Positions 34,103 to 51,146 are shown, counted from the first letter of the whole stretch. The stretch is 62,974 nt of DNA, filler included, from Octopus bimaculoides (GCF_001194135.2; 6 parts of 5 records of this genome joined end to end with filler, not necessarily neighbours in it); one strand, 5' to 3'. The notes: a model not told the origin generated them from the sequence alone. Translations and numbers: made by a program.

Positions 34103-35256
34103 NNNNNNNNNNNNNNNNNNNNNNNNNNNNNNNNNNNNNNNNNNNNTTAATTAATTAANNNNNNNNNNNNNNNNNNNNNNNNNNNNNNNNNNNNNNNNNN
34201 NNATATATATATATATACATACAAATATAAGTTTATATATATGTGTATATGAATAAAATAAATCTCTGAGTGAGCTATAAACAGTAGCTGCACGACATTG
34301 TGAAGTATATTTGCCACTTAAGGGTGGATGCTACTGTAGCTTGTAGCCAAGGAAAACACCTCCTCCAACTGGCTATTGACACACTTTCTGTGCCCTTACA
34401 GTATTTTCAAAGCGAAGTCATCCTTCCCATCTTCAACCTGACGTGATACACACGGACTCGGGTTTCTGAGTATTGACCCGTCATCAGTGTGTGACAATCA
34501 CCGCTTGTCAATGTGAAGTGCTTCCCAATGCAAATATATATATATCCTTTTTCCAGTGATGAAAAGTCACTGATCTCGGAAAGTGTAAACAAGCAATAAT
34601 AAATCTCTGCTGTTTTCTTGTTGTTGTTCATGTAGTTGCTGTAGTTGTTGTTCTTCTTCCGTTTCCCTCTACTTTTCCCTTTATTTTTTCATCTCCTATT
34701 TCGATTTCTTTTTCTTCTTTTCTTCTTCCTCTCTTTCTTCCTTTTCTTCATCCTCCTTTTATATTAATTTCTCTTCTCTTTTCTATTTCTACTTCTTCCT
34801 AAACTTATTTTCTTTTTCTTCGAATTCTTCTTTTTTCTTATTCTTCATTACTTCTTCATTTTCTTAAATTCTTCTTCTTCTTCATTATTTCTTCATTTTC
34901 TTAAATTCTTCTTCGTTTTCTTCCTCTCCTTGATCCTTTCCTTCTTCTTCATCTTCAACTTCTTTTACTTCTGTTTCTTCTTCTTTTGTTTCGCTATCTT
35001 CTACTCCTTCCTAAACTTATTTTCTTCTTCCCTGAGCACTTTTCTTCTTTTTCTGATTCTTCTCTTTCTTCTTTTTATCTTCTTCTCCTTCTTCTTCTTC
35101 TCCTTTTCCTTTTTCTTCGTTTTCTTCTTTTTCTTGGTTATGTTTTTGTTTATCATGATATCTCTTCTCATCGTTTGTCTCATTTCAAACACAAATTCTT
35201 CAATTTTTATCACAAATATTTTCCGTGAGAAATGTTATCATTCTATACTGTTACAC

Positions 35257-35327
35257 ATGTTTACAGATATAACATTTCGTGTATTGGACAAGGATGCTCC
35301 AAATGGTCTTTCTTGGTTATACATATT
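35257..35327 (+). pseudogene. LRR pseudoexon (71 nt)
   Basis: Follows the same TATCACAAATATTT...CTG intron block as the intact cassettes. Reads YNISCIGQG...NGLSWLYI(L) with indels; both splice sites lost. Confidence 0.5.
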
Positions 35328-36215
35328 TTATGTTTTTTCAGCTTTGTAGTTTCAATATTATGAATATAATTGTTCACCAATGTTTTAATGTCCACTCGTT
35401 TTATCGCCCCTCGCTCTTTTTATCAGTTTATCTCACATTCCTTTCCCCTATTGGCTCAATATCTGTTTGATTGTTTCTAAAGACGAGTACAACTGGGATG
35501 TTAAATATGTCTGCTCTAAATCTTATAAGTGGAAATTTACGCTCATGTATATTTTCGAATCTGCATGTATATGTGACTATAAAATTTGTATTCATAAATG
35601 ATGCCTTTTTCTTTTCTCTGGATTATACTTTTCCGTCTTCTCTTCCTCCGTCTTCTATTCATCTCTAACTTCTTCATTCACTTCAGGTACTTCTGCTAAT
35701 GCAGCAGCTTATAGATGCAGAAGTGTAAAATACAAATATTTAGAATATAGTCACAAATATACTTCTCTTTATAAAAGGTTCCAACTTCCGGCACTCGTAG
35801 TTTAGATCAATTTTCAAGATACGCTTTCACTGAAAATATAGAAATTTGATATCTTCTCATGCACCTTCTTCTTGCAACTTCTTCCTTTTAAATTTATATT
35901 CGCTCTCATCAAAGTTGTGGTTGAGTGTTTTTCAATGTATCAAAGATAGTATGTGGGCGTAACTGCACAGTGCTATTGTATGCACAGTGCAAAATTCTAT
36001 GTGCATGTGTGCGTATCTGACAGCGTGTATCTGTTTTTCTTTTCCAACTTGTTCTCTTTCTCCAAAATACCTTCTCATACTCCGAATTATTAGTTAAATT
36101 TTCTTTAAGTAATTTCTGTTTTCATCTTATTTCTGTTGTTTGTTTTAAATACGTTCTTCTTCTTCTTCTTCTTCTTCTTCTTCTTCTTCTTCTTCTTCTT
36201 CTTCTTCTTCTTCTT

Positions 36216-36272
<57 letters not shown>

Positions 36273-37228
36273 TTACATTTTCTACTTCGGTATCCCATTC
36301 TTTGTAATTCTCATCGTATTCTTCTTTCTCCTTTTCTCCGTCGTCGCCATTCTCCGTTTCCCCAAATGGATTCTTAGGACTCAATATTAACAATCTATGA
36401 TATTTTTTCTCCTGCATCATTATAGTATCAGCAATAGCATCCAAGGATAATTCTAATTACTTACTGTCTTCCCATTTGGCTTTTCTTCCAACTTTATTCT
36501 TCTCTAAGTCATATTGTCTCTTTCTCCATTTCTGTTTGAACATATTTTAGAGTCTTTGAACGTACGTGTGAAGGTATGTGCGTAAAGTCATGTGTAGGTG
36601 TATCAACATCAGCGATAAATATTCTCCGCAAAATTGTATGTGTGTATGTGCATATCACTGTACTATTTATATTCATATTTAATTTTCTTCTCCCCTATTC
36701 TGATTTTCGTTGTTATTGTCCACATCCTCCTTGTACTGTGTTTTTCATTCCTGAATCTTTCGCCTTTTTTACAATTTCCTCTACATCGTTCATTTTCATC
36801 ATCTTGTGTTTCTTCTCCGCTTTTCAAAATTTTCAACTGCTTTTTCTATTTTTTTTGAATGCGTTCTTTTCGCTTCATCACATTTTATTTGCACTTTTAT
36901 AAACCCATACACTCCATAACTTGTTTTCCTTCACCACCTTAGTAATTCCGCTAAAATTCTCCGTGTGCATCGCTTCTGTATTCCATCTTCTGCTCCCACC
37001 TCTTGTCCTCGCCTCCTCCTCTCCTCTTCATACTTCCGCTCTTCCTGTCCTCGCAGCTCCTACATCCCCTCCTCCTCAATCACCTACTCCAAATCGTCCT
37101 CTTCATTAATTTTATCATGCTTTTCTTTCATAGCCCTCGTTCTCTCATCTGATTTTAAAACTCCAAATTTAATGTTTTATCAGACAACACTTCTATATTA
37201 TTTCTTTATAATCTGTTTCATGTAACAG

Positions 37229-37300
37229 AACATTCGAGCATAATAAGATCGAGAAAGTCGAACGTGGAACCTTCCAAGATCTTATCAATTTACAGAAACT
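37229..37300 (+). CDS. 72-nt phase-2 exon encoding one typical extracellular LRR
   Basis: taacag|A ACA TTC GAG CAT AAT AAG ATC...TTA CAG AAA CT|gtaagt = TFEHNKIEKVERGTFQDLINLQK(L); canonical AG/GT, no stop. Confidence 0.85.
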
Positions 37301-37697
37301 GTAAGTTCAATTTCCGTTGATATTTTATTAACGTAATATTACTAGAAATTTCATGTCTTCGCTTTCTTAATCTTTCTTTCTGCACTTCTAAATATATTCT
37401 GCAATTATATCTCCGTTTGTGGGGGTATGAAGACTTGCAGGAATGTGTGAATGAATAAATGTTTTGTGCATGAAAGGATGATTTTCTGCGAACTCGTATA
37501 TCTGTATCTGTGTGTGGTAGGTTAACTTCATACCTCTGTCGGTGTCTGAGTGTCTGCAACAGAAATCATAGTTACTAACAGAAAATCATGTTACTAAAAA
37601 CATTTTTACACGGTTTTCATATCATTCTTTTACCCAAATGAAATACATTTCTCACATGCATACACGCGCGCGCGCGCGAAGATATGCATATATGCAG

Positions 37698-37969
37698 ACA
37701 CGGGTGTTAGTGTAGTAAGAAGTTTGTTACAAACCACATGGTTCAAGACTGAGTGTCACAATGTGGAACCGCTGGCGCATGACGTTTCCTTTTTTCTCGG
37801 GTTAAGCAATTCCTTTTGAGTGGGTTTGATAGATAAAACTGAAAAAAGTCTGCTGTTTGATACATGTTATATACATATATGTGTGTCTTTTGTGTCTTTT
37901 TTGTCCCCAACCACCTCTTAACTAATGGTGCAGTGCTTCCCACGCCGTCACTTAACGCTTCGGCAAAAG
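37698..37969 (+). mobile_element. Diverged SINE A, cut at the Gypsy LTR junction
   Basis: Head through CTTAACGCTTCGGCAAAAG, then abrupt start of LTR sequence. Confidence 0.65.
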
Positions 37970-37971
37970 TT

Positions 37972-39057
37972 TTGAACCCGTACTCTGGTCAGTTGGGGAG
38001 AATGGTATTTCCTTTGTCTTGTCGGTAACCACAGCTATTTTTAGCGTAGCTGCCCCTTTCCGGTCAGCGAAAGTTCAAAAAGGCAGCATAGGAATTTTAC
38101 CGACCGACCCATCTTGGCAGGGGGTAAAGTAGCACTATGAGCTATGGTATTTGGGCTGAATAGGAGAACGGGAATTGGCGGGAAAGCAGTCGGCCGAAGG
38201 AGTTAGCAGAGAACTTTAGCCAGTGGAGTTGTAGCAGCCAGCCAGGGCAGTGGAGTTGTAGCAGCCAGCCGGGGCAGTTGAGTTGTAGCAGCCAGCCGAG
38301 GCAGTCGAGTTGTAGCAGCCAGCCGAAGCAGTTGGGGGATAGCAGTTTGCCCGTGGAGATGGGGCCAGTCGAGTGAGATGAAGTGAAGATGAGAAAGAGA
38401 TAGCCGGTCGTCCGAAGCAATTGTACAGAGATGAAGATGAAGAATAAGTCTGACAGAGAGAAAGATATGGTCAGCAGAAATGTATAGAGTCCCAGAGAGA
38501 GAGAGAGGGACAGAGAGATGGGATACTGGCAGCCAAATGCGATGGCAGTAGTCAGTTGTTTACCTCTTGGATTATAGTGAGTTTTGTNNNNNNNNNNNNN
38601 NNNNNNNNNNNNNNNNNNNNNNNNNNNNNNNNNNNNNNNNNNNNNNNNNNNGATGTGTAACTGAAAAGAGAAAACGAAGAAAAGAAAGAACAGAAAGAAC
38701 TTTCGATGGATTTAATGATTGCGAACCCTTGATTATGTTCACGCAATTTTAGACCATTATATGCTATTGAACTGTTATGTAATGTTTTGGAATGTATTCT
38801 CATGTTTATGTAATGCTTTATTCTCATGTTTTTGATGTTATGTGAAAAGAAAAGGTTACCCAACGCATGGTCTTCGTGTTGTTTCTTCCTCCCCTCCTTT
38901 TTCCTGTGTTGTTCTTCGTTGCGTGCTCCAGCCGGGGCTTTATTATCGGTCAGGTGACCGAGACGAATTTGCTAACTCGCTGAGTGTGAACGTTCGCGCG
39001 CGCGCGAGTCCTTTCTTCGGTGTTAAGGATGTGCTTCGCGTGCGGGCGTTCGTAACA
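37972..39057 (+). mobile_element. 5' LTR of Ty3/Gypsy element, first 58 bp missing
   Basis: 37972-38021 is identical to 41409-41458 of the 3' LTR; ends ...GTAACA just before the PBS. Confidence 0.85.
38220..38333 (+). repeat. 27-bp tandem repeat (4 full copies plus partial) inside the LTR
   Basis: GCAGTGGAGTTGTAGCAGCCAGCCAGG-type units at 38220, 38247, 38274, 38301 and 38328. Confidence 0.9.
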
Positions 39058-39061
39058 AAAT

Positions 39062-39079
39062 TGGTGTCAGAAGTGGGAT
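39062..39079 (+). promoter_or_regulatory. Primer-binding site, tRNA-Leu(CAA)-type
   Basis: TGGTGTCAGAAGTGGGAT, complementary to the ...AUCCCACUUCUGACACCA 3' end of metazoan tRNA-Leu(CAA); 4 nt after the LTR end. Confidence 0.85.
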
Positions 39080-39113
39080 CTTTTGATTTGGTGCAGTGAG
39101 TTTGTTGTTCGTC

Positions 39114-39975
39114 ATGGCTTCGGAGGGTGCGAGTGCGAAGAGTCAGGCTGGGAGGGAGGAAGTATCCCTGTCCTTGATTGTGAGGATGCTGGAAGAGCAG
39201 AGGGAGAGCTTCGCTGAATTCAGGGAAGAGCAACCGCAGATGCGGGAGAGCTTCGCTCAATTCAGGAGGGAACAACAGAGGATGCGGGAGGAGTTCCGCG
39301 GACTGAGTAGTGATGTCGTATGTTGTAAGAAGCAGATCGAAAGGCCCAATGAGAGGACGGAGCGCATTGAGAAGTTTTGTGCTGCCGAGCCTGAGGTCGC
39401 TAAACCTGAAGTGGTTGCTGTTGCTGCATCATCACGTGATACTCCGACGTCTGGATGCGGGTCTCCTGGAGTTGAAAGTAGCGGTGTGGTCCCTGCTAGG
39501 AAGAAGCCACAAGAGGCGTTGGCTAGGGCTCTGGAGTTCGAGTCCTGTATGAAACCGAGCATCNNNNNNNNNNGGCGTTGGCTAGGGCTCTGGAGTTCGA
39601 GTCCTGTATGAAACCGAGCATCGGAAATTTACGAGTAAGTGGATGCTCCGGATTCAAGGCGCGGAGCGTAAAAGTCCGTGAAGTTGAAGGACTTAGTAGG
39701 CGGAATGAGGAGACGAGTGGTGTGTGTTGTTGGCACTGTGGGAAAGGCGGACACAGGCGGCGAGACTGCTACAGTTGGCGGCGAGAGAGGTTTCGAACTG
39801 CAGACCTCAAGTTGAACCCGAGGAAGTGCAGTCTTTCAGAAGGAAGTAAAGTACCTGGGACACCTGAGTTGTGACTGCCCAACAAGAAATAGAGTCGGGA
39901 AACGAAGAGGAGCTGGTGTTGAGGGGCAACCACCAGCCAGACGTTCCAAAGAAGCCCCACACTCGAGACGGCATG
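39114..39975 (+). pseudogene. gag: Gypsy gag, internally deleted and rearranged
   Basis: MASEG... coiled-coil N-terminus, RKKPQE|ALARALEFES junction, zinc knuckle CWHCGKGGHRRRDC (39728-39769), intruding RT-like snippet, GNEEELVLRGNHQP end. Confidence 0.75.
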
Positions 39976-39983
39976 CAGGGTCT

Positions 39984-40230
39984 GTGATTGACAGCCTTAG
40001 AGTGAACGGAAAAGTCAACGGCCGGACGTGTTCTCTAATGATCGATTCGTCCTCGGGACAGACTTTTGTGAGGTCCGATGTGTTGCAGGATCTAGAGTTG
40101 TCAGAGACATCGCAGCAGTTGTGTGGTGTGACCGGACATTGCACTGAGCTGAGAGGGCCAGTTCATGTCCGGATTGATGTTGCCGGATTGGACGTTGTGC
40201 TTCCTGTTTACGTAGTTGAAATGGAGGATT
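39984..40230 (+). pseudogene. Gypsy aspartic protease domain, runs into gap
   Basis: SLRVNGKVNGRTCSLMIDSSSGQTFVR; the D(S/T)G triad reads DSS at 40044. Confidence 0.75.
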
Positions 40231-40882
40231 NNNNNNNNNNNNNNNNNNNNNNNNNNNNNNNNNNNNNNNNNNNNNNNNNNNNNNNNNNNNNNNNNNNNNN
40301 NNNNNNNNNNNNNNNNNNNNNNNNNNNNNNNNNNNNNNNNNNNNNNNNNNNNNNNNNNNNNNNNNNNNNNNNNNNNNNNNNNNNNNNNNNNNNNNNNNNN
40401 NNNNNNNNNNNNNNNNNNNNNNNNNNNNNNNNNNNNNNNNNNNNNNNNNNNNNNNNNNNNNNNNNNNNNNNNNNNNNNNNNNNNNNNNNNNNNNNNNNNN
40501 NNNNNNNNNNNNNNNNNNNNNNNNNNNNNNNNNNNNNNNNNNNNNNNNNNNNNNNNNNNNNNNNNNNNNNNNNNNNNNNNNNNNNNNNNNNNNNNNNNNN
40601 NNNNNNNNNNNNNNNNNNNNNNNNNNNNNNNNNNNNNNNNNNNNNNNNNNNNNNNNNNNNNNNNNNNNNNNNNNNNNNNNNNNNNNNNNNNNNNNNNNNN
40701 NNNNNNNNNNNNNNNNNNNNNNNNNNNNNNNNNNNNNNNNNNNNNNNNNNNNNNNNNNNNNNNNNNNNNNNNNNNNNNNNNNNNNNNNNNNNNNNNNNNN
40801 NNNNNNNNNNNNNNNNNNNNNNNNNNNNNNNNNNNNNNNNNNNNNNNNNNNNNNNNNNNNNNNNNNNNNNNNNNNNNNNNNN

Positions 40883-41266
40883 GAACTGCCCCGGGAAACC
40901 TCCAGCTATGTGAAGTATCTCCAGGAAAGTCTGACTGAGGTACACCAGCAAGTTAGAGAAGCTCTGAAGTTTTCAGGTGAAGTAAGGAAGCGTCGGCACG
41001 ACACCAGGGCTAGTGAAGCCAACTTTAAGGAGGGTGATGAAGTGTGGTCTCATAACCCCAGGCGGAAGAGAGGACAGTCACCGAAGTTGCAGAGTCCATG
41101 GGAAGGGCCTTATACAGTAATGGATCGCCTGTCCGATGTGACATACTGGATTCGAGGAGGCAGGAGAACTTCTCCGAAAATTGTACACGCAAACCGTCTG
41201 TGGAAGTACCATGGTTCTGGACAGTTCAGCTGGAACACACCTGCAGGGGTTGGATCCACTTGCTAA
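40883..41266 (+). pseudogene. Gypsy integrase C-terminal (GPY/F) region
   Basis: FKEGDEVWSHNPRRKRGQSPKLQSPWEGPYTVMDRLSDVTYWI...VHANRLWKY. Confidence 0.9.
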
Positions 41267-41339
41267 AAAAGTCTGAGAAAGAAAAGAATCGATTTAGGAG
41301 TTGAAATGTTGTTTGTTTTTGTCGGGACGACAAAGAACT

Positions 41340-41458
41340 AGGGAAGGGGTTGTGATGCGACCACCGAAAATGCAATTAGCACTATATCCCTATCTCCCGG
41401 GCTGGGTCTTGAACCCGTACTCTGGTCAGTTGGGGAGAATGGTATTTCCTTTGTCTTG
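41340..41458 (+). mobile_element. Polypurine tract and start of 3' LTR
   Basis: AGGGAAGGGG (41340-49), then TGTGATGCG at 41351; the remainder lies in the gap. Confidence 0.85.
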
Positions 41459-42727
41459 NNNNNNNNNNNNNNNNNNNNNNNNNNNNNNNNNNNNNNNNNN
41501 NNNNNNNNNNNNNNNNNNNNNNNNNNNNNNNNNNNNNNNNNNNNNNNNNNNNNNNNNNCTTCTTCTTCTTCTTCTTCTTCTTCTTCTTCTTCTTCCTATT
41601 CTTCTTCTACTTCTGTTTTTTTCTTCTTCTACTCCTACTTCTTCTTATGCTAATTACTTTTCTTCTTCACGTCCACATTCTCGTCATCGTCCTGCTCCTG
41701 CTCCCCTTCTCCTCCTCATTCTTCTTCATCTACTCTTTCTTTTCTTCTTCTTCTTCTTCTTCTTCTTCTTCTTCTTCTTCTTCTTCTTCTTCTTCTATTC
41801 CTATTCTTCTTCTTTTTCTTCTGCTTCCTCTTCCTCTTCTTCTTTTTCTTCTTCTTTTTCTTCTTTTTCTTCCGTTTCTTCTTCTTCTTCTTCTTCTTCT
41901 TCTTCTTCTTCTCCTTCCTCTGCTTCTTCTTCTTCTTCTTCTTCTTCTTCTTCTTCTTCTTCTTCTTCTACTTCTTCTTTTTCTACTTTTTCTTTTTGTT
42001 CTAATTCTTTTTTTGTTCTAATTCTTCCTTTTCTTCTTCTTCTTCTTCTGCTTCTTCTTCATCTTCTTCTTCTCATTCTCCTTCCTCTTATTCTTCATCT
42101 TCTCTTTCTTCTTCTATTTTTTCTTCTTCTTCTTCTTCTTCTTCTTTTCCTATTCTTCTTCTTCTTCTTCTTCATCTGCCTCTTCTTTTTTCTTCTTCTT
42201 TTTCTAGTTTTTCTTTTTGTTCTAATTCTTCTTCTTCTTCTTCTTCTTCCTCTTCCACTTCTTCTTCTCCTTCTTCTTCTTCTACTCCTCCTCCTTCTTC
42301 TTCTTCTACTCCTCCTCCTCCNNNNNNNNNNNNNNNNNNNNNNNNNNNNNNNNNNNNNNNNNNNNNNNNNNNNNNNNNNNNNNNNNNNNNNNNNNNNNNN
42401 NNNNNNNNNNNNNNNNNNNNNNNNNNNNNNNNNNNNNNNNNNNNNNNNNNNNNNNNNNNNNNNNNNNNNNNNNNNNNNNNNNNNNNNNNNNNNNNNNNNN
42501 NNNNNNNNNNNNNNNNNNNNNNNNNNNNNNNNNNNNNNNNNNNNNNNNNNNNNNNNNNNNNNNNNNNNNNNNNNNNNNNNNNNNNNNNNNNNNNNNNNNN
42601 NNNNNNNNNNNNNNNNNNNNNNNNNNNNNNNNNNNNNNNNNNNNNNTTCTTCTTCTTCTTCTTCTTCTCCTTCTTCTTCTACTTCTTCTTTTTCTTCTTC
42701 TTCTTCTCCTTCTTCTGCTTCTTCTTC

Positions 42728-42759
<32 letters not shown>

Positions 42760-42970
42760 CTCCTTCTTCTGCTTCTTTTTTTCTACTCCTATTTCTTCTT
42801 TTTCTTCTTCCTTCTTCTTCTTCTTCTTCTTCTTCTTCTTCTGAATCATTGTTATCTGTCCTTTTTTAATTGTCATCTGTACTTTTTTTAATTGTTATCC
42901 GTCCGATGTTTCATATTGTATCAGAAATATTTGCCATATAATATATTTTACGCTTTCTTTACTGCTATAG

Positions 42971-43042
42971 ATATCTTCACTCCACCAACATTGCAATTAT
43001 CAAACCAGGTGCATTCACGGGGCTTTCGAATTTACAGACACT
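42971..43042 (+). CDS. 72-nt phase-2 LRR exon
   Basis: ctatag|A TAT CTT CAC TCC ACC AAC ATT...TTA CAG ACA CT|gtaagt = YLHSTNIAIIKPGAFTGLSNLQT(L). Confidence 0.85.
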
Positions 43043-43163
43043 GTAAGTCCGTTCAGTTTCTTGATATTACTTTCTGACAATGAATTATTTCTTGTCATTT
43101 TTTAAATTCTTTTTTGTCTTTCATTTTCTCAATAAACTCGATGTTCAATATTTCCTCTTCTTC

Positions 43164-43195
<32 letters not shown>

Positions 43196-44102
43196 CTTCT
43201 TCTTCTTCTTCGCCTCCTTTTCTTTTTCTTCTCCTTCTTCTTTCTTTCATCATGTTCTTCTTCTCCTTCTTCCTCATCTTCTACTTCTTCTCCTATGTCT
43301 TCTTCTCCTATGTCTTCTTCTCCTATGTCTTCTTCCTTTCTTCTTCTTCTTCTTCTTCTTCTTCTTCTTCTTCTTCTTCTTCGATATCTATCCTCTTTTT
43401 CTTCCTGTTAATCTTAAACCACAGTGTTTTATATTGTATCACAAATATTTCCCAAATGATATATGGAATATATGGCCTGAAACAATTTAACTGATGATAT
43501 ATTTCTTGTAAAAAGGTGTATTCTAATTCAACTTTCTTTTGTCAATTAAGCGATATTAAATTAATAATCTCTCTCACCATATTGCCCCACGAGTGTGTGT
43601 GAATATGTGTGAATGTGAGTGTGCGTATCACCTTCCGTCGTTGATATTATGAGTATAAGTGTGCGTATGAGTGCATGTGTATATATTGATCAATGAATCC
43701 ATATATTCTCTGATTTTTCAGCCATGTTATCCCTCTCAATCTTTTCTGCTCTATCTCTGAATTATTTCCTGTTATGTCTTTAACGAAATATTCTGTTTTC
43801 AACGTCTTGAACACCTCGATTTTCAATGTGTCGTCGTCGTCGTCGTCTTCTTCTTCTTCTTCTTCTTCTTCTTCTTCTTCTTCTTCTTCTTTTTCTTCTT
43901 CTTCTTCTTCTTCTTCTTCTTCTTCTTCTTCTTCTTCTTCTTCTTCTTCTTCTTCTTCTCCTCCTTCTCCTTCTTCTTTTTCTCCTTCTTCTTCATTGTT
44001 GTCTGTGCCTTTTTCATTTTGTCATTCTAAAGCCACATTGTTTGATATTGTATCACACATATTTTGCATATAATCTATTTTACTCTTTCTTTACTGCTAT
44101 AG

Positions 44103-44174
44103 AAATCTTGGCTTCAACAACATTGCAACTTTCAAACCAGATACATTCACTGGGCTTTCGAATTTACAGACATT
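44103..44174 (+). CDS. 72-nt phase-2 LRR exon
   Basis: ctatag|A AAT CTT GGC TTC AAC AAC ATT...TTA CAG ACA TT|gtaagt = NLGFNNIATFKPDTFTGLSNLQT(L). Confidence 0.9.
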
Positions 44175-44425
44175 GTAAGTCCGTTCAGATTCTTGATATT
44201 ACTTTCTCACAATGAATTATTTCTTGTCATTTTTTGAATACTTTTTTCTCCTTTCATTTTCTCGATCAACCAGATGTTCAATGTGTCTTTTCTTCTTTTT
44301 CTTCTTCTTCTTCTTCTCCTCCTCCTCATTCTTCTTCTTCTTCTTCTTCTCCTCCTCATTCTTCTTCTTCTTCTTCTTCTTCTCCTTCTTCTTCTCCTTC
44401 TTCTTCTCCCATCCTTCTTCTTCTT

Positions 44426-44456
<31 letters not shown>

Positions 44457-44605
44457 TTATTATTATCTTTATTATTATTTTTTTCTTCTTCTACTCCAAT
44501 GTTATCTGGCGTTTTTTCATCCTGTCATTCTAAGGCCACAATGGTTTATATTGTATCACAAATATTTGCCATATAATATATTTTACGCTTTCTTCACTGC
44601 TATAG

Positions 44606-44677
44606 AGATCTTCACTCCAACAACATTGCAACTATCAAACCAAATACATTCAAGGGTCTTTCGAATTTACAGGAACT
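44606..44677 (+). CDS. 72-nt phase-2 LRR exon
   Basis: ctatag|A GAT CTT CAC TCC AAC AAC ATT...TTA CAG GAA CT|gtaaat = DLHSNNIATIKPNTFKGLSNLQE(L). Confidence 0.9.
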
Positions 44678-44786
44678 GTAAATCCGTTCAGTTTCTTGAT
44701 ATTACTTTCTGACAATGAATAATTTCTCGTCAGTTTTTTGAATACTTTTTCTCTTTCATTTTTACATCAACTCGAAGTTGAATATG

Positions 44787-44817
<31 letters not shown>

Positions 44818-44937
44818 CTTCTTCTTCTTCGTTATCTGTCCTCTTTTTTCTTCCTTTCATTCTAAATTCACAATGTTTGATATTGTATCACAAATATTTT
44901 CCATATAATCTATTTTACTCTATCTTTACTGGTATAG

Positions 44938-45009
44938 ATATCTTTACTCCAACAACATTGCAACTATCAAACCAGCTGTATTCACGGGGCTTTCAGATTT
45001 ACAGACATT
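44938..45009 (+). pseudogene. 72-nt LRR exon with intact frame but destroyed donor
   Basis: gtatag|A TAT CTT TAC TCC AAC AAC ATT...CAG ACA TT|tgaagtcc = YLYSNNIATIKPAVFTGLSDLQT; sister copies have gtaagtcc here. Confidence 0.8.
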
Positions 45010-45436
45010 TGAAGTCCGTTCAGTTTCTTGATATTACTCGCTGACAATAAATTTTTTCTTGTCATTTTTTGGATACTTTTTTGTCTTTTCATTTTCTCGA
45101 TCAACTCGATATATAAGACTTTTTCTTGTTGTTGTTGTTGTTGTTGTTCTTCTTGTTCTCCTTATCCTCTTGCTTCCTCTTCTTCTTCAACTTCTACTTC
45201 TTTTTTTCGTCTTCTTCCTTTTCTTCTTCTTCTTCTTCTTCTTCTTCTTCTTCTTCTTCTTCTTCTTCTTCTTCTTCTTCTTCCTTTTCGTCTCCATTTT
45301 CGACATATATCCCATGTTCTCTCATGTCGTCTATACATGGTCTGCCATATTTGCCGATATTATAAATAGAATTCTGTCTATTATTTTATCATAAATATTT
45401 TCTATTTCATTTCTTTAACTGTATTTACTTCTACAG

Positions 45437-45509
45437 AGCGCTTGACGGTGCTAATATGACAAGGACAACGACTGCGACATAACATTTCCTGCATGAAACC
45501 TTTATGTCT
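45437..45509 (+). pseudogene. LRR-like pseudoexon (73 nt, in-frame stop)
   Basis: ctacag|A GCG CTT GAC GGT GCT AAT ATG...ACA TAA...CT|gtaagc; good splice sites, one base too long. Confidence 0.5.
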
Positions 45510-46430
45510 GTAAGCGTATATGTTTATGTCCTTTTGCATATGAATGACTGGATGTATATGTGACAATATAATTCACATACTTATGTTTTAGCTACACTTT
45601 TGTTTCCCATTCCCTTCTCGATTCTTGTGGTTGTTATCCGTCTATTCTTCCACCGAATTCGTTTCTTCCTAATTTACGTCACTTTATTTATCTAATAGAT
45701 CAAGCTTCGAAGGACAAGTGAAAATAGAAATGTGTAAAATATTGTCAAATATGACTTTCCATACATAAAGCTCACCAGGTTCTCCGCTTCAATCTTTGTC
45801 TTCTTATGTTCTTCGCTATCTCCTCATTTTTGCTGTCCACTAGCTTTTTCCGACATTCTCTTCAGAATTCTTTGTTGATTTTGTTGTTGTTGTTGTTGTT
45901 GTTCTTCTTCTTCTTATCATTATTATTATTATTATTGTTATTATTATTCATCTTTTCCACCTCCTCGAACACTCCTCCTACTCCAGTCCTTCCCTTGTTC
46001 TTCCGCTTCCACTTCTTCCTCTTTCTCTTCTTCTTCAAATGAAAAATATAAATTCTTTTATTCTTTTATTGACACAACTTACTTTAAGTAAATCTCACCA
46101 GTTTACCCTTCCTTCTTCTGTGTTATTTCATTTTCTTCGTTTCTGCTTTCTTTCTGCTGAACACATGCTCTTTCCAATCTTCTCCTCTTCTGAATTGTTT
46201 CTCGTTGCTGTTGTTATTGTAGTTGTTGCTATTGTTGTGGTTGTTGTTGTTCTCCTTCTTCTATTTCTTTCTCTTCTCCTTCTTTCTCTTCTTCTTCTTC
46301 CATTTCTTCCTTCTTCTTCTTCTTTTTCCTCTACTTCCTCTTCTTCGTTTTCTTCTTCTTCGTTATCTATCCTCTTTTTCTTCCTGACATTAATATCATA
46401 TTTAAAACCTTCTCTAGTAACGGTAATATA

Positions 46431-46615
46431 GAAACTGAGAGGAACATAATGAAGAGCATCCAGCAAGTATCCAACTCCATCCACCAAAGTATGAAGGTGA
46501 CTATAGATTATCCCACTAAGCACCCCAACAATAGTCTCCCGGTCCCTGTTACTGATATTCACTTAGAGACTGTGAACAACAATGTTCAGCTCTTCCACTC
46601 CTGTTACATGATTTA
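46431..46615 (+). mobile_element. Penelope-like RT fragment
   Basis: MKSIQQVSNSIHQSMKVTIDYPTKHPNNSLPVPVTDI...QLFHSCYM resembles the PLE RT segment IANSIHPSIQVxxDYPSxxxxxxLPxLD...FYxKP (from recall). Confidence 0.6.
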
Positions 46616-46644
46616 ATTAGTAATTTAGATGTAAGCTACATTTG

Positions 46645-46995
46645 GAGCTGTGGAGGCGCAATGGCCCAGTGTTTAGGGCAGTGCACTCGCGATCATAGGG
46701 TCGCAGTTTCGATTCCCAAACCGGGCATTGTGAGTGTTTATTAAGCGAAAACACCTAAAGCTCCACGAGGCTCCGGCAGGGTATGGCGGCGAACCCTGCT
46801 GTACTCTTCCACCACAACTTTCTCTCACTCTTACTTCCTGTTTCTGTTGTGCCTGTAATTCAAAGGGTCAGCCTTGTCACACTATGTCACGCTGAATATC
46901 CCCTAGAACCACTTGCGCGTTAATTTCACAAGCAGGCTGTTCAGTTGATCGGATCAACTGGAACCCTCAACATCGTAACTGATGGAGTGCCAACA
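46645..46995 (+). mobile_element. tRNA-derived SINE, family C
   Basis: Head GGAGGCGCAATGGCCCAGTGTTTAGGGC (A box) and GTTTCGATTCCC (B box), followed by ~270 bp of non-tRNA body. Confidence 0.8.
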
Positions 46996-47889
46996 CACAT
47001 ACATTTGGAGCTAAAATAATTGGAAATTGGTTCTTTAAAACAGTTATGTCAAAGTATGTGNNNNNNNNNNNNNNNNNNNNNNNNNNNNNNNNNNNNNNNN
47101 NNNNNNNNNNNNNNNNNNNNNNNNNNNNNNNNNNNNNNNNNNNNNNNNNNNNNNNNNNNNNNNNNNNNNNNNNNNNNNNNNNNNNNNNNNNNNNNNNNNN
47201 NNNNNNNNNNNNNNNNNNNNNNNNNNNNNNNNNNNNNNNNNNNNNNNNNNNNNNNNNNNNNNNNNNNNNNNNNNNNNNNNNNNNNNNNNNNNNNNNNNNN
47301 NNNNNNNNNNNNNNNNNNNNNNNNNNNNNNNNNNNNNNNNNNNNNNNNNNNNNNNNNNNNNNNNNNNNNNNNNNNNNNNNNNNNNNNNNNNNNNNNNNNN
47401 NNNNNNNNNNNNNNNNNNNNNNNNNNNNNNNNNNNNNNNNNNNNNNNNNNNNNNNNNNNNNNNNNNNNNNNNNNNNNNNNNNNNNNNNNNNNNNNNNNNN
47501 NNNNNNNNNNNNNNNNNNNNNNNNNNNNNNNNNNNNNNNNNNNNNNNNNNNNNNNNNNNNNNNNNNNNNNNNNNNNNNNNNNNNNNNNNNNNNNNNNNNN
47601 NNNNNNNNNNNNNNNNNNNNNNNNNNNNNNNNNNNNNNNNNNNNNNNNNNNNNNNNNNNNNNNNNNNNNNNNNNNNNNNNNNNNNNNNNNNNNNNNNNNN
47701 NNNNNNNNNNNNNNNNNNNNNNNNNNNNNNNNNNNNNNNNNNNNNNNNNNNNNNNNNNNNNNNNNNNNNNNNNNNNNNNNNNNNTATATATATATATAAA
47801 TTTAAAGAATGGAGTAAACGCATATTATAACTGCATACTTTTATTCCGACATATGTTTCGAAGAATTACAATTTATGCGATCCATAGGA

Positions 47890-48286
47890 ATCGGTGATGT
47901 TAAAAATGTAAACTTTCCCTCAGGGAAATGTATGGGAACCTGCTTAAACGTAAGACATTATAACCGAGTATGAGAACTATAGTTGGATAAGGTTATAACG
48001 TAATTCATTTGAAAAAACCGTTGGAGATTCCTTGTTAAATGTTGTTGGTAATAAATAGCAATGAGTTGATTGAAATTTCAGTGGATCAACATGATTTCCG
48101 AGCATTGTGTTTTATCATCGAAAAGTTTATGTTCAAATATCAGACGATTGGTTTGATCTAGTTTCCGCCATGTTTATAAATACACATAATTAACAGGAGT
48201 CGAGAGAATGGCCTACATACCAACCTACATGCACACATATATATAAAGATTCCTGTGTGTGTATGCGTATGTGCTTACATAAACAT

Positions 48287-48318
<32 letters not shown>

Positions 48319-48774
48319 TGTTATTACTTATTATATCCTTATGACAACGGAGTTATCAGAAGGAATAATATCCACAACAATTCCATTCAGATATTTCTGA
48401 TGATTGCTGCATTTGCCTCTGTATTTCTATCACGAAACTATTTGGTAATTTGGTTATCTAGGGACTATAATATTCTTTCTACGATAAGCACAAGGCCTGC
48501 AATTTTGTGGCTGGGGGCTTGTCGATTACATCCACCTTATTGCTCGGCTGGTACTTAATTCATCGACCCCGAAATGATGAAAGGCAAAGTCGTCCTCGAA
48601 ATTTGGAACTCATAACATGAAAACAGAACACCCTGTAACTATAGAGTCGATTGATACACAGTATTACTATATCGCAAGGTTTTGTGATTTGCCAATCTGA
48701 CAGAAACGGGTTGATTCAATATGTATGATATCCCCATTCTTCTGTGTTAATATATATATGTTTACATATACACG

Positions 48775-48836
<62 letters not shown>

Positions 48837-49130
48837 TATATACATTTGTGTGTGTGGAGATGTAAAGAAAGAACGAGAGGNNNNNNNNNNCACACACACA
48901 CACACATGTATATATACATTTGTGTGTGTGGAGATGTAAAGAAAGAACGAGAGGGAAATTTAACACAATCCTATCCCTATTAAAGCTTAACCACACTGCT
49001 TGGAATGGGGAACATTTTAAGGGAGATAAATAGTAGTAAAACTAACAACGTTTGCGCAGTATTAGAGGTTGGGAGGTATACAAGCAGATCTATTTAAAAA
49101 TTGTATTTATCATAACATGATAGAATTCCA
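47890..49130 (+). pseudogene. Decayed LRR-coding stretches interrupted by repeats
   Basis: RNSFEK; LNVVGNK*Q*VD*NFSGST; QISDDWFDLVS; LEWGTF*G; IQADLFKN; YHNMIEF. Confidence 0.4.
48470..48620 (-). mobile_element. SINE family B
   Basis: GGTACTTAATTCATCGACCCCGAAATGATGAAAGGCAAAGTCG is the reverse complement of the core. Confidence 0.75.
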
Positions 49131-50205
49131 TTACGATGTTGCAAAATTCCTAAAAGGTTCAGAATATTCTCTTCTGAAAATCATTTTCTATAAAGGACGT
49201 GTCAAGGAATAAAATATTTCCAATACCTACAATTTCAGATATATCTACTATAATTTCCAGTCATATTTAGAATGCTTATCCAGCTAAATCTTTCATGTCA
49301 AATATAAGTGGTATTTTGCTCAGCAATATTTCGCAGCTTCGCAATACCTAGCGACTTTCGCCACAACAGTTATGTGACAATACCGTTTGCCAGTTATTGC
49401 TAGTATGTCACTTATATCTTGGAGCTGGTAATCTATGTATTGCAGGTTAGCTACATATAGTAGATTTATCCATATCTTGTATGTCATCTCTTCAAACATA
49501 TCATCTATATCTATCATAGTATGTCATCTGTCCAGTGTATCATCTATATCTTGTATAACCTCTAAGTCTAGTACGCCATTTATATATTGTATATCATCTA
49601 TATATTGTATGCCATCTCTTTCTCCTCTGTCAGCTGTATGTAATCTGTTTGCCCAATACATTTTATCATATCATGTTTGTCTAATGATACAAATTTATAT
49701 CTAGAATATCATCTAAAGATTCTCGAACCACATCCTACCTAATTTTATTTGATATCTGTTATTTCTAATTGTCATTTTCTCATTTCTCCTCTCTAATAAA
49801 TCTACTGTAGTATCTAGTACAGAGTGGTGGGAATGGCTTACATTCATACCCACCTCTCTCTCTCTCTCTCTCTCTCTGTAACTCTAACTTTATTTCTTTC
49901 TACTACCATATTCATGCTTGAATTTGTATGAAGATGTCTATGATTGCATGTGAAGGTGCAATAAGACAAGGGTAAATCTTCCCTTATTCATCTTCCCTCT
50001 CATTTCTACTCAGGCATAAGACTATTGAACTGAGATGTTTTTGGCTTTAGCGATTACCTGATGACCTCCTTATCAGTGGATTATTTGGTCTTGGTCAATA
50101 CACAGCGAATGAGACAGACCCAAAGACATACAGAAATATTAAAATGTATTGAAATGAAAATGAAATAATTATCTTCTATCACATGACTTATAAACTCAAC
50201 GAAGG

Positions 50206-50269
<64 letters not shown>

Positions 50270-50460
50270 GGCACACCGGGCAAAATGCTTACCGATAATT
50301 CGTCTATCTTCACTTTATTATTTCAAATGCCACCGAGGTCGATTTTGTCTTTCGTCCTTTCAGCGTCGCTTAAATAAGTACCAGTTACGCACTGGGGTCG
50401 ATCAAATCGACTTAGTCCCTTCTCCCAAATTTGAGGTCTTGTGCTTCCATTAGAAATGAT
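50270..50460 (+). mobile_element. SINE family B between (ATT)n tracts
   Basis: CACCGGGCAAAATGCTTA...CCGAGGTCGATTTTGTCTTTCGTCCTTTC...AAGTACCAGTT. Confidence 0.8.
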
Positions 50461-50495
50461 TATTATTATCATTATTATTATTATTATCATTATTA

Positions 50496-50554
<59 letters not shown>

Positions 50555-51090
50555 GAGTGAGAGAGCTGTGCATGCCATCAGAGTGACATTGGGGTAAAAT
50601 ATACGAAGCCCAGTATATACCCATAATGACTACCCGTCTGATAAGGGTGCACCAGGCACATGCATCGCAACCATGTGTGCGCGACATGGTGATCTCATAT
50701 CAAGATAAACAGCACATGACCTTGCAGGTGGGGCCCAGTTAGAATTTCTTTGAGGTCGAGTAGCCCATCCCGCTCAAAAGGTCCCTGAATAAGAGTTGTT
50801 TAAGGATGTTGAACGAAACACCCATGTTTCCAGAGGTGAAATATTCAAACCCCAAAGAATCTCTCTCAACACATAGCTATGGTGCTCCCCATAACTTCTG
50901 CTCATGATCAGAGATGCACATATCATCAGCCATCAAGGGAATGCTCAACTGGATATGGTCGAATAACTGACAAGCAAATCTGTGTTATTAAGCAGAATAT
51001 TTACTGTAGCTCATCTTTTATACCAAGACAAAACAATGTACATGATAACACTTCCAATCAATTAAGATCAGAAGCCTGGTACTGCATCAG
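50555..51090 (-). mobile_element. Element X, second and longer copy, between (TAA)n tracts
   Basis: Aligns with 1430-1886 and extends ~70 bp further. Confidence 0.7.
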
Positions 51091-51093
51091 TTA

Positions 51094-51146
<53 letters not shown>

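What the first reader, a model, noticed from the sequence alone, without database searches (positions are those of the whole stretch)
37229..45509. Hidden array of single-LRR 72-nt exon cassettes
Seen: five 72-nt segments bounded by AG and, in four cases, GT. All are 1+69+2 nt. Spliced in order they give Leu at every junction (CTA, CTA, TTA, CTA) and a continuous typical-class LRR solenoid: TFEHNKIEKVERGTFQDLINLQKL YLHSTNIAIIKPGAFTGLSNLQTL NLGFNNIATFKPDTFTGLSNLQTL DLHSNNIATIKPNTFKGLSNLQEL YLYSNNI... Established: one-LRR, phase-2, 72-nt exons occur in RXFP/LGR, Slit, peroxidasin and LGI-type genes, and any one can be added or skipped without a frameshift. Inference: part of an extracellular LRR receptor or secreted protein gene whose other exons lie outside the window or in gaps. 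GRL101/RXFP-like GPCR is one candidate, but I found no LDLa, 7TM or TIR exon here.
Basis: partly seen in the sequence, partly recalled or inferred. Interest (0 to 1): 0.9.

Follow-up and report, generated by a model that had tools for sequence, protein, structure and literature searches.

The report
Octopus receptor gene's LRR exon cassettes
The five 72-base segments are real exons, each coding one leucine-rich repeat, from the tail of a repeat array in an octopus-type adhesion-receptor gene family; the family is already annotated, so this is a correct but fairly ordinary gene fragment.

Summary
Observation confirmed. Five 72-nt (1+69+2, phase-2) single-LRR exons lie on the + strand at 37229, 42971, 44103, 44606 and 44938. 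All follow AG. Four are followed by GTAAGT/GTAAAT; the fifth has TG (dead donor). The joined peptide hits Pfam LRR_8 at E=1e-61.

Exons 2-5 are "class A" exon+intron-flank units, tandemly duplicated and separated by (CTT)n. The same units occur in Octopus sinensis genes built as signal peptide + LRRNT exon followed by 72-nt cassettes. RefSeq lists up to 13 isoforms of these genes in 24-aa steps. O. vulgaris relatives carry a GPS motif and are named adhesion GPCR G6-like.

Window 46385-50120 is colinear (85-93%) with the O. sinensis intron before the LRRCT-like exon. The piece therefore ends just short of that exon.

RNA shows exon 1 spliced at both predicted sites, but to partner exons absent from the piece. 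An exon 2-to-exon 3 junction appears in three runs. Exon 4's donor joins an exon that is not exon 5. No LDLa or LGR/RXFP feature was found. Proximal intron flanks are more conserved than the exons, and variation sits at concave-face codons.

Verdict: new member of a known kind. Interest is modest.

The parts
35174..35388 (+). Probable decayed relic of a class A exon+flank unit (dead cassette) upstream of exon 1.
   Evidence: blastn to the upstream flanks of O. sinensis class A exons gives 66-69% over 230-600 nt. A local alignment to L002 17064-17306 shows the conserved flank motif TATCACAAATATTTTCC and a degenerate, shortened exon. Weak to moderate evidence.
37229..37300 (+). LRR exon 1 (TFEHNKIEKVERGTFQDLINLQK). 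It is a divergent, class-B-like repeat with no flank similarity to exons 2-5.
   Evidence: AG/GTAAGT boundaries. RNA contigs in X46 (467 nt, depth 155) and X10 (591 nt, depth 8.7) match 37229-37303 with 0 mismatches and break exactly at 37229, and 2 raw reads in X44 also lie only on 37229-37303. The partner exons are not in the piece.
37969..41458 (+). LTR retrotransposon inserted in the intron after exon 1. It has gag with a weak CCHC hit, an aspartic protease and an integrase C-terminus. Its 3' LTR is cut by the gap at 41459.
   Evidence: Direct repeat 37969-38021 / 41406-41458 at 98%. Pfam gives Integrase_p58_C at E=1.6e-12; the Asp_protease_2 (1.3e-4) and zf-CCHC (0.029) hits are weak and below their Pfam cutoffs. 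The pol core is missing in gap 40231-40882.
41559..42842 (.). (CTT)n microsatellite of about 250+65 copies, split by gap 42322-42646, lying upstream of unit 2.
   Evidence: Tandem Repeats Finder. The gap flanks are both CTT repeat.
42971..43042 (+). LRR exon 2 (YLHSTNIAIIKPGAFTGLSNLQT), class A. Its unit with conserved flanks spans 42908-43191.
   Evidence: Its last 29 nt are joined to the first 42 nt of exon 3 in 71-nt RNA contigs (X10 depth 25, X11 depth 18.6) and in 2 raw reads of X44. Tandem 72-nt-period near-copies occur in an 877-nt X10 contig.
43152..43464 (+). Class A upstream flank without its exon. Relative to O. sinensis, about 730 bp (exon + downstream flank + repeat) is missing at 43464.
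   Evidence: blastn: window 43152-43464 matches L001 13708-14043, and window 43464-44028 matches L001 14778-15328. The L001 exon lies at 14068-14139.
43464..44028 (+). Conserved intron block that follows class A exons in O. sinensis.
   Evidence: 77.6% to L001 14778-15328 and 78.8% to L001 17440-17739.
44103..44174 (+). LRR exon 3 (NLGFNNIATFKPDTFTGLSNLQT), class A. The unit spans 43977-44317.
   Evidence: The acceptor at 44103 is used in RNA, where 42 nt including the variable codons match exactly.
44606..44677 (+). LRR exon 4 (DLHSNNIATIKPNTFKGLSNLQE), class A. The unit spans 44461-44825.
   Evidence: In RNA runs X46, X10 and X11 only 93-97% matches (paralogues) were seen. In X42 (run kind unknown) its exact last 30 nt are joined to an exon that is not in the piece.
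44938..45009 (+). LRR exon 5 (YLYSNNIATIKPAVFTGLSDLQT), class A, with the donor destroyed (GT to TG at 45010-45011). The unit spans 44810-45154.
   Evidence: Only unspliced low-depth RNA crosses its 3' end: X45 raw reads and an X10 337-nt contig at depth 2.7.
46385..50120 (+). Intron sequence colinear with the O. sinensis intron between the last LRR cassette and the LRRCT-like exon. It places this array at the 3' end of the LRR region.
   Evidence: Six colinear blastn blocks at 85-93% to L002 34106-37338. The L002 LRRCT-like exon lies at 38931-39140.

Best explanation
The segments are LRR cassette exons. Each 72-nt, phase-2 exon encodes one 24-residue 'typical' LRR of the extracellular N-terminal domain of a receptor.

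Exons 2-5 form the 3'-terminal part of the cassette array of a gene from an octopus-lineage family. The family's architecture is signal peptide + LRRNT, a variable number of LRR cassettes, an LRRCT-like cap, a Cys-rich region, then (in full-length O. vulgaris models) HRM, GAIN/GPS and transmembrane helices. That is an adhesion-GPCR-type receptor.

The array grew by tandem duplication of whole exon+intron-flank units of 330-1100 bp, each separated by a (CTT)n microsatellite. Because every cassette is 72 nt and symmetric in phase, cassettes can be gained, lost or skipped without a frameshift. Here one unit has lost its exon (at 43464) and one has lost its donor (exon 5).

Inferred mechanism: the spliceosome includes a variable subset of cassettes, as the O. 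sinensis isoforms indicate. This yields ectodomains of different length whose concave-face residues differ from cassette to cassette.

Shown: the exon structure, the homology and colinearity, use of the exon 1 sites and of the exon 2-to-3 junction in RNA, and the cassette-step isoforms in the relative.

Inferred: that this particular locus continues into GPS/7TM exons; that cassette choice is regulated; and that exon 1 belongs to the same gene.
For: - Pfam LRR_8 E=1e-61 on the joined peptide.
- Canonical acceptors on all five exons and canonical donors on four.
- Units 2-5 share 81-89% identity including about 100-150 nt of intron on each side.
- O. sinensis locus L001 has an SP+LRRNT exon followed by 72-nt LRR exons. 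Its flanks and exons are 76-86% identical to window units.
- L002 has 11 such cassettes, and its 13 RefSeq isoforms (337/361/385/409 aa) differ by which cassettes are included.
- In L002, exons homologous to the post-LRR part of the O. vulgaris 'adhesion GPCR G6-like' proteins continue to the contig end.
- P0116 has GPS PF01825 at E=9e-11, and P0023 has a weak HRM.
- Window 46385-50120 is colinear with L002 34106-37338 at 85-93%.
- RNA: exon 1 is bounded exactly at both predicted sites. The exon 2-to-3 junction is in X10, X11 and X44. 72-nt-period joints occur in longer contigs.
- The exons look selected rather than decaying. Scaffold residues L/N/I/F/L are invariant, while codons 1, 3, 4 and 23 (LRR positions x5, x7, x8, x3 of the concave face) are the most variable. 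dN/dS is 1.98 within the window and about 0.9 overall.
- The proximal intron flank (-50 to -1) is 93% identical between species, against 74% for the exon and pS=0.28.
- Ritschard et al. 2019 (PMC6408891) describe an octopus-specific adhesion-GPCR expansion in which some members have LRRs.
Against: - No SP/LRRNT, LRRCT, GPS or 7TM exon lies in the piece, so the receptor class rests on homology and colinearity only.
- Exon 1 is spliced in RNA to partners absent from the piece. It is separated from exon 2 by five gaps and a retroelement. It may belong to another LRR gene or to a mis-scaffolded contig.
- Exact-match RNA for exon 4 was not found in three RNA runs. Exon 5 is seen only unspliced. Three deep RNA-seq runs give depth 0-3 over exons 4-5.
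- Near-identical paralogous exons exist, so the RNA matches could come from a twin locus.
- The dN/dS estimates rest on 69 nt in 4-10 copies.
- The RefSeq isoforms are computed models, and their read support was not inspected.
Confidence: 0.72

Rival explanations
1. Decaying duplicate. The class A run (exons 2-5) is a non-functional, recently duplicated remnant of an LRR array. The RNA matches would then come from an intact paralogous locus.
For: - Exon 5's donor is destroyed.
- One unit has lost its exon, and there is a relic unit at 35.2 kb.
- No exact RNA match for exon 4 was found in X46, X10 or X11.
- Depth is 0-3, with unspliced reads, in three RNA-seq runs.
- Many near-identical paralogous exons are expressed.
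Against: - All five exons are open, with every scaffold residue intact. Differences concentrate at the concave-face codons rather than being spread evenly.
- Four canonical splice-site pairs are retained.
- The exon 2-to-3 junction, including exon 3's locus-specific variable codons, matches exactly in three runs.
- Colinearity with the functional O. sinensis gene continues downstream.
Confidence: 0.15
2. Secreted or membrane-anchored LRR-only protein. The gene would end after the LRRCT and Cys-rich region and would have no 7TM part, as in the short O. sinensis 'slit homolog-like' models.
For: The O. sinensis RefSeq models of 337-525 aa stop after the Cys-rich region.
Against: - In L002, exons homologous to residues 325-410 of the O. 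vulgaris aGPCR-like protein continue past the end of the RefSeq model, up to the contig end. Those short models are therefore truncated by the assembly.
- The O. vulgaris chromosome-level model P0116 carries a GPS motif.
Confidence: 0.1
3. LGR/RXFP/GRL101-type receptor: LDLa + LRR + rhodopsin-type 7TM.
For: The only support is the shared 72-nt, phase-2, one-LRR-per-exon design. That design also occurs in gonadotropin-receptor genes (PMC11378527).
Against: - No LDLa or 7TM exon lies in the piece.
- The closest homologues, found through the N-terminal exon and through DNA-level intron similarity, carry GPS and weak HRM. Neither LDLa nor 7tm_1 appeared in their Pfam scans.
Confidence: 0.02
4. VLR-like germline cassettes used for somatic gene assembly rather than splicing.
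For: A tandem bank of hypervariable LRR modules with variation at concave-face residues.
Against: Every cassette has a pyrimidine tract, AG and GTAAGT, and the cassettes are joined at exactly those sites in RNA with a 72-nt period. No evidence of DNA-level joined forms was obtained.
Confidence: 0.01

Closest known systems
Octopus sinensis RefSeq gene on VCDQ01004985.1 (XP_036355612-XP_036355623 and XP_029656609, 'slit homolog 1/2-like', 'LRRC4-like') and its paralogue on VCDQ01007574.1 (XP_036354947)
   Same: - The same class A exon+flank unit; the proximal 50 nt upstream are 93% identical.
- The same 72-nt, phase-2 design.
- A colinear terminal intron at 85-93% identity.
- Isoforms that step by 24 aa.
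   Different: - In O. sinensis, class A (NNI[AS]TIKEG) alternates with class B (NKISRIEKEM) and introns are 0.9-3.3 kb.
- The window has a class-A-only run with introns of 260-1060 bp and KP(G/D/N/A) instead of KEG.
- The window also has one exon-less unit and one cassette without a donor.
- The species differs: introns are about 80-90% identical.
Octopus-specific adhesion GPCR expansion ('group 3' of Ritschard et al. 2019, PMC6408891); O. vulgaris 'adhesion GPCR G6-like' CAJ1099246 and CAI9744517
   Same: - The N-terminal SP+LRRNT is 57-66% identical to fragment P0003, which carries LRRs 83% identical to window exons 3 and 4.
- LRR cassettes of the same classes occur.
- A GPS motif is present in the full-length model.
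   Different: The window holds only LRR cassettes, so GPS/7TM could not be shown for this locus. The paper does not describe exon-per-LRR structure or cassette splicing.
Brown-algal LRR-ROCO genes (Zambounis 2012; PMC11378527)
   Same: One LRR per 72-bp, phase-2 exon. Exon duplication and shuffling, alternative splicing of LRR exons, and variable solvent-exposed residues are all reported.
   Different: They are cytoplasmic ROC-COR GTPases in an unrelated lineage. The design arose independently and there is no sequence relationship.
LGR/gonadotropin-receptor, Slit and NLRP3 LRR exon modularity (PMC6642158; PMC11378527)
   Same: In-phase, LRR-sized exons that allow skipping without a frameshift.
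   Different: The domain context differs: rhodopsin-type 7TM, EGF/LamG, or NACHT. There is no DNA or N-terminal homology to this family.

Membership tests
Typical-class extracellular LRR (Pfam LRR_8) | 24-residue repeats with LxxLxLxxNxIxxIxxxxFxxLxxL, scoring above the Pfam gathering threshold | tested here: met
   LRR_8 at E=1.1e-61, 204.9 bits against a cut-off of 27, with 4 stretches.
One-LRR-per-exon, phase-2, 72-nt cassette array | Each repeat is a separate 72-nt exon with AG/GT boundaries and symmetric phase | tested here: met
   Five of five are 72 nt and follow AG; four of five have a GT donor. Shuffle control mean is 0.08.
One-LRR-per-exon, phase-2, 72-nt cassette array | The boundaries are used by the spliceosome | tested here: met
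   Both exon 1 sites are used. The exon 2 donor to exon 3 acceptor junction is seen in X10, X11 and X44. For exon 4 only the donor is seen, in a run of unknown kind. For exon 5 no spliced read was found.
Octopus LRR-adhesion-GPCR-type family (O. sinensis 'slit-like' / O. vulgaris 'ADGRG6-like') | Class A/B exon+flank units homologous at the DNA level | tested here: met
   Window units are 76-86% identical to L001, and the proximal upstream flank is 93% identical to O. sinensis class A units in L001 and L002.
Octopus LRR-adhesion-GPCR-type family (O. sinensis 'slit-like' / O. vulgaris 'ADGRG6-like') | Colinearity with the gene beyond the LRR array | tested here: met
   Window 46385-50120 matches L002 34106-37338 in six ordered blocks at 85-93%.
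Octopus LRR-adhesion-GPCR-type family (O. sinensis 'slit-like' / O. vulgaris 'ADGRG6-like') | Signal peptide + LRRNT first exon | tested here: not met
   tblastn of P0003 and P0004 finds no such exon in the piece. It is expected upstream of the array, outside the piece, so its absence here is not informative.
Octopus LRR-adhesion-GPCR-type family (O. sinensis 'slit-like' / O. vulgaris 'ADGRG6-like') | LRRCT-like cap, Cys-rich region, GAIN/GPS and 7TM exons in the same gene | not testable with these tools
   None is in the piece. By colinearity the LRRCT-like exon is expected roughly 1.3-1.6 kb beyond 51441. GPS was shown only in the O. vulgaris relative.
LGR / RXFP / GRL101 receptors | LDLa module(s) and rhodopsin-type 7TM joined to the LRRs | tested here: not met
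   Neither is in the piece. The nearest full-length relatives have GPS and weak HRM, and neither LDLa nor 7tm_1 appeared in their Pfam scans.
Slit | Four LRRNT-LRR-LRRCT blocks followed by EGF and LamG domains | tested here: not met
   Relatives have a single LRRNT, one LRR run, an LRRCT-like cap and no EGF or LamG hit. The 'slit homolog' names come from automatic annotation.
Lamprey VLR-type assembly cassettes | Cassettes lack splice signals and are joined at the DNA level | tested here: not met
   The cassettes have canonical splice signals and are joined in RNA at those sites. Somatic DNA joints were not examined.

The most novel reading that the evidence does not exclude
The cassette arrays of this octopus-specific LRR-adhesion-receptor family may act as a combinatorial splicing system. 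Different cells would include different subsets of hypervariable LRR cassettes. Intron flanks conserved beyond the synonymous rate would direct cassette choice. The result would be a repertoire of recognition surfaces in arm nerve cord, sucker and skin, comparable in logic to Dscam1 or clustered protocadherins but built from LRRs. Rapid birth and death of cassettes through (CTT)n-mediated unequal exchange would supply new variants.
Probability: 0.2. Interest if true: 0.7.

Novelty: new member of a known kind. Interest (0 to 1): 0.35.

Why it matters
For annotation, it shows that a gap-ridden, microsatellite-rich stretch holds real, spliced exons of a receptor gene. No protein with a close match to them turned up in the protein collections searched.

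It also flags a family whose short-read assemblies and gene models are systematically truncated or collapsed.

Biologically, the pattern suggests that cassette choice is regulated and that the binding surface is under diversifying pressure. The pattern has three parts: conserved intron flanks, variation at concave-face codons, and isoforms that step by one cassette in a relative. This would be worth testing in a lineage-specific neural and sensory receptor expansion. It is so far only suggested, on few sites.

Tried and rejected
- A search for further family exons in the piece (SP/LRRNT, LRRCT, Cys-rich, SEA, HRM, GPS, TM) found none. I used tblastn with P0003, P0004, P0116, P0023, P0021, P0080 and P0082, plus regex scans of all six frames.
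After that, only short repeat-free stretches could be tested, so long-range exon-exon joints could not be examined directly.
- Word-index protein searches were poor for this family: 8 hits, 2 hits and 0 hits. The exhaustive representative search found the family.
- Look-ups of P0021, P0023 and P0116 loci failed because the products are not on record. The chromosome-level gene context in O. vulgaris could therefore not be read.
- DNA read depth was not used to test for collapsed copies. Only about 2 Gb per run is read, under 1x for this genome (own estimate; the genome size was not measured here).
- Rfam found no match in the piece.
- The Ly6/uPAR-like and SEA-like appearance of the Cys-rich region in relatives is my reading of the sequences. 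Pfam did not support it at E<0.01, so it is not claimed.
- The organism is coded by the tools. An octopod other than O. sinensis is inferred from 76-93% DNA identity to O. sinensis loci. Octopus bimaculoides is a guess from the UniParc fragment P0003 and the 2015 DNA runs.

Full report
**1. Observation**

The piece is 34203-51441, 37% GC, with 1885 N. It carries the five reported segments on the + strand at 37229-37300, 42971-43042, 44103-44174, 44606-44677 and 44938-45009.

Each segment is 72 nt and open in the 1+69+2 frame. Each follows a pyrimidine tract and AG. Exons 1-4 are followed by GTAAGT or GTAAAT. Exon 5 is followed by TGAAGT, so it has no usable donor; the next GT would add 4 nt and shift the frame.

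It hits Pfam LRR_8 at E=1.1e-61.

As a chance control I scanned for AG-N72-GT with an open frame and an LRR-like pattern. The scan finds these four plus one poly-Leu microsatellite artefact on the + strand. It finds none on the - strand, and a mean of 0.08 per shuffle.

**2. Gaps**

No gap interrupts an exon. All five gaps named in the finding lie between exon 1 and exon 2.

- Gap 39564-39573 has the same 49 nt on both sides. Outside the finding, gap 48881-48890 has the same 64 nt on both sides. Both are overlap artefacts, so the sequence is continuous there.
- Gap 42322-42646 sits inside (CTT)n.
- Gap 40231-40882 sits inside a retroelement, where the pol core is missing.
- Gap 41459-41558 cuts what looks like the element's 3' LTR.

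None of the last three could be closed. The linkage of the exon 1 contig (34203-38587) to the exon 2-5 contig (42647-47060) therefore rests on scaffolding through a repeat.

**3. Anatomy**

*Duplicated units.* Exons 2-5 are copies of one exon+intron unit. blastn of unit 4 finds the other three at 81-89% over 285-350 nt, including 100-150 nt of intron on each side. The exons themselves are 59-64 of 72 nt identical to each other. Each unit is followed by a (CTT)n/(TCT)n microsatellite. Unit spacing is 1132, 503 and 332 nt. Exon 1 shares no flank with the others and is a different repeat type.

*Retroelement.* Between exon 1 and exon 2 lies an LTR retrotransposon.
- Direct repeat 37969-38021 / 41406-41458 at 98%.
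- ORFs with a clear Integrase_p58_C hit (E=1.6e-12) and weaker, sub-threshold zf-CCHC and Asp_protease_2 hits.

*Lost exon.* Between exons 2 and 3 there is a class A upstream flank that has lost its exon. Window 43152-43464 aligns to O. sinensis L001 13708-14043. Window 43464-44028 aligns to L001 14778-15328. The missing L001 interval contains the 72-nt exon 14068-14139.

*Relic.* A weak relic of another class A unit lies at about 35174-35388.

**4. Relatives**

*First hits.* The first protein search gave two useful hits.
- P0003 is a 116-aa UniParc fragment with signal peptide, LRRNT and two LRRs. Those LRRs are 83% identical to window exons 3 and 4.
- P0004 is Octopus sinensis 'LRRC4-like'.

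*Locus L001.* P0004's locus, L001, has an SP+LRRNT exon followed by three 72-nt single-LRR exons before the contig ends.

*Wider family.* An exhaustive HMMER search with P0003 and a cluster look-up showed that the same N-terminus heads two sets of proteins.
- Several O. sinensis RefSeq genes, named 'slit homolog-like', 'LRRC15-like' and 'chondroadherin-like'. One has 13 listed isoforms of 337/361/385/409 aa. Another has isoforms numbered up to X9 (six listed) of 477/501/525 aa. Both step by exactly 24 aa.
- O. vulgaris proteins named 'adhesion GPCR G6-like'. P0116 has a GPS motif (PF01825, E=9e-11) followed by hydrophobic helices. P0023 has a weak HRM hit.

*Locus L002.* Locus L002 (O. sinensis, 52.7 kb) carries 11 AG-72-GT LRR exons. 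They alternate between class A (NNI[AS]TIKEG.FTGLSNL) and class B (NKISRIEKEMFQGLHNLEK). The 13 isoforms differ by which of the first cassettes are included.

In L002, exons homologous to the post-LRR part of the O. vulgaris proteins run on to the contig end, beyond the RefSeq stop. The 'slit-like' models are therefore the truncated N-terminal part of this receptor type.

*Literature.* Ritschard et al. 2019 (PMC6408891) describe an octopus-specific adhesion-GPCR expansion with these features.
- LRRs in 5 of 22 members.
- Genes co-localised in the genome.
- Signs of positive selection.
- Enrichment in axial nerve cord, suckers and skin.

**5. Position of the window in such a gene**

Window 46385-50120 is colinear with L002 34106-37338, in six ordered blocks at 85-93%. 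That L002 interval is the long intron between the last LRR cassette (31667-31738) and the LRRCT-like exon (38931-39140).

Exons 2-5 are therefore the last cassettes of an array. The piece should stop roughly 1.3-1.6 kb before the LRRCT-like exon. tblastn with five family proteins finds no non-LRR family exon in the piece, and no SP/LRRNT exon.

**6. RNA evidence**

*Exon 1.*
- Contigs in X46 (467 nt, depth 155) and X10 (591 nt, depth 8.7) match 37229-37303 without mismatch and break exactly at 37229. Two raw reads of X44 also lie only on 37229-37303.
- An X11 contig (976 nt) carries 37253-37300 exactly, but nothing from X11 was laid on 37100-37450, so its splice boundaries were not seen.
- Upstream the X10 contig reads ...FHKLTSLEL-L. 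Downstream it reads L-YLNGNDISNIE.
- Neither partner sequence is in the piece, and no database protein shares words with this peptide.
- In X46 an exon-1-like sequence recurs 288 nt later, which implies a four-LRR super-repeat.
- So exon 1 is a real exon with the predicted boundaries, but it is not seen joined to exon 2. It may belong to a different, unannotated LRR gene, to a twin locus, or to a mis-scaffolded contig.

*Exon 2 to exon 3.*
- 71-nt contigs in X10 (depth 25) and X11 (depth 18.6), and two raw reads in X44, have three parts in a row: 27 nt with one mismatch to exon 3's tail, then CT, then 42 nt identical to the start of exon 3.
- That is exactly the last 29 nt of exon 2 joined to the first 42 nt of exon 3.

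*Exon-2-like copies.* An 877-nt X10 contig holds three consecutive 72-nt units that match exon 2's core at 97-100% but differ at the first codons. More exon-2-like cassettes therefore exist than the assembly shows.

*Exon 4.* Only 93-97% matches were found in X46, X10 and X11. In X42 (run kind unknown) its exact last 30 nt are joined to an exon that differs from exon 4 at 4 of 65 positions. That is not exon 5, which has 9 differences.

*Exons 4-5 in deep RNA-seq.* Three raw RNA-seq runs give depth 0-3 with reads running from exon into intron, and no junctions.

**7. Evolutionary pattern**

I compared ten class A units, four from the window and six from O. sinensis.

| Region | Between species | Within window | Within O. 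sinensis |
|---|---|---|---|
| 50 nt upstream of exon | 93% | 90% | 98% |
| Exon | 74% | 85% | 83% |

The between-species synonymous difference is pS=0.28, against 0.07 for the upstream flank.

Amino-acid variation concentrates at codons 1, 3, 4, 13, 14 and 23. The scaffold residues L2, N6, I7, F15, L18 and L21 are invariant or nearly so. Mapped onto LxxLxLxxN, codons 23, 1, 3 and 4 are positions x3, x5, x7 and x8, which form the concave beta-strand face in LRR structures (established knowledge).

Nei-Gojobori dN/dS is 1.98 among the window's four exons and about 0.9 overall. The numbers rest on few sites, so they are suggestive only. They argue against neutral decay. They are consistent with constrained splicing signals around cassettes whose binding residues diversify.

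**8. Comparison with known systems**

One LRR per 72-bp phase-2 exon, with duplication, shuffling and alternative splicing, is documented in several places:
- brown-algal LRR-ROCO genes and gonadotropin receptors (PMC11378527);
- human LRR families such as NLRP3, as 'exonic modularity' (PMC6642158).

The octopus family itself is annotated and its expansion is published. I found no paper in the held library describing cassette-wise splicing or flank conservation in it.

**9. Verdict**

The core interpretation is right: an extracellular LRR receptor gene whose remaining exons lie outside the piece.

Three corrections apply.
- The receptor class is adhesion-GPCR-type, not LGR/RXFP.
- Exon 1 is not shown to belong with exons 2-5.
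- Exon 5 is a dead cassette.

This is a new member of a known kind, of modest interest. The more interesting reading, a regulated combinatorial cassette system, remains untested.

Noticed in passing
window 37969-41458: An LTR retrotransposon on the + strand sits in the intron after exon 1. It has gag with a weak CCHC hit, an aspartic protease and an integrase C-terminal/SH3 region. The pol core is absent in gap 40231-40882, so either the gap length is underestimated or the element is internally deleted.
   Followed up: partly
window 39564-39573 and 48881-48890: Both 10-N gaps are flanked by identical sequence on each side (49 nt and 64 nt). They are overlap artefacts that duplicate sequence, not true gaps.
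   Followed up: yes
window 37229-37300 and RNA runs X10, X11, X46: Exon 1 occurs in transcripts of an LRR gene with a 288-nt (four-LRR) super-repeat. Its neighbouring exons (...FHKLTSLELL / YLNGNDISNIE...) are not in the piece. No protein in the 5.8-billion-sequence collection shares words with this peptide, so the gene appears to be unannotated.
   Followed up: partly
window 42971-43042 and X10 877-nt contig: Transcripts carry three consecutive cassettes identical to exon 2's core but differing in the first codons (for example FLHS and MLES against YLHS). The short-read assembly has probably collapsed or lost near-identical units, possibly in the gaps.
   Followed up: partly
window 41559-42307, 42647-42842, 43152-43382, 43846-43994, 44286-44455, 44788-44830, 45147-45283: Every intron of the class A run carries a (CTT)n/(TCT)n microsatellite, up to about 250 copies. 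This is a plausible substrate for unequal exchange that adds or removes units, and a likely cause of the assembly gaps.
   Followed up: no
window 51295-51441: A 147-nt segment is about 92% identical, on the minus strand, to L001 8677-8822 and L002 5738-5884 upstream of the O. sinensis genes. It is probably an interspersed repeat.
   Followed up: no
window 34314-34457: This segment is 79% identical to L002 38078-38219, which in O. sinensis lies just before the LRRCT-like exon. Here it lies upstream of exon 1, out of colinear order. It is either a repeat or a hint that the first contig is mis-scaffolded.
   Followed up: no
window 38221-38355: A 27-nt tandem repeat of about 4 copies (CAGTGGAGTTGTAGCAGCCAGCCGGGG) lies inside the presumed 5' LTR.
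   Followed up: no
L002 47070-51802 (O. sinensis VCDQ01004985.1): Exons homologous to residues 325-410 of the O. vulgaris adhesion-GPCR-like protein lie beyond the end of RefSeq model XP_036355612 and run to the contig end. The 'slit homolog 1-like' models are therefore truncated and misnamed.
   Followed up: partly
L002 28668-28739 and 31667-31738: Two intact AG-72-GT LRR cassettes in the O. sinensis gene are used by none of the 13 RefSeq isoforms. They may be rarely used or silent cassettes.
   Followed up: no
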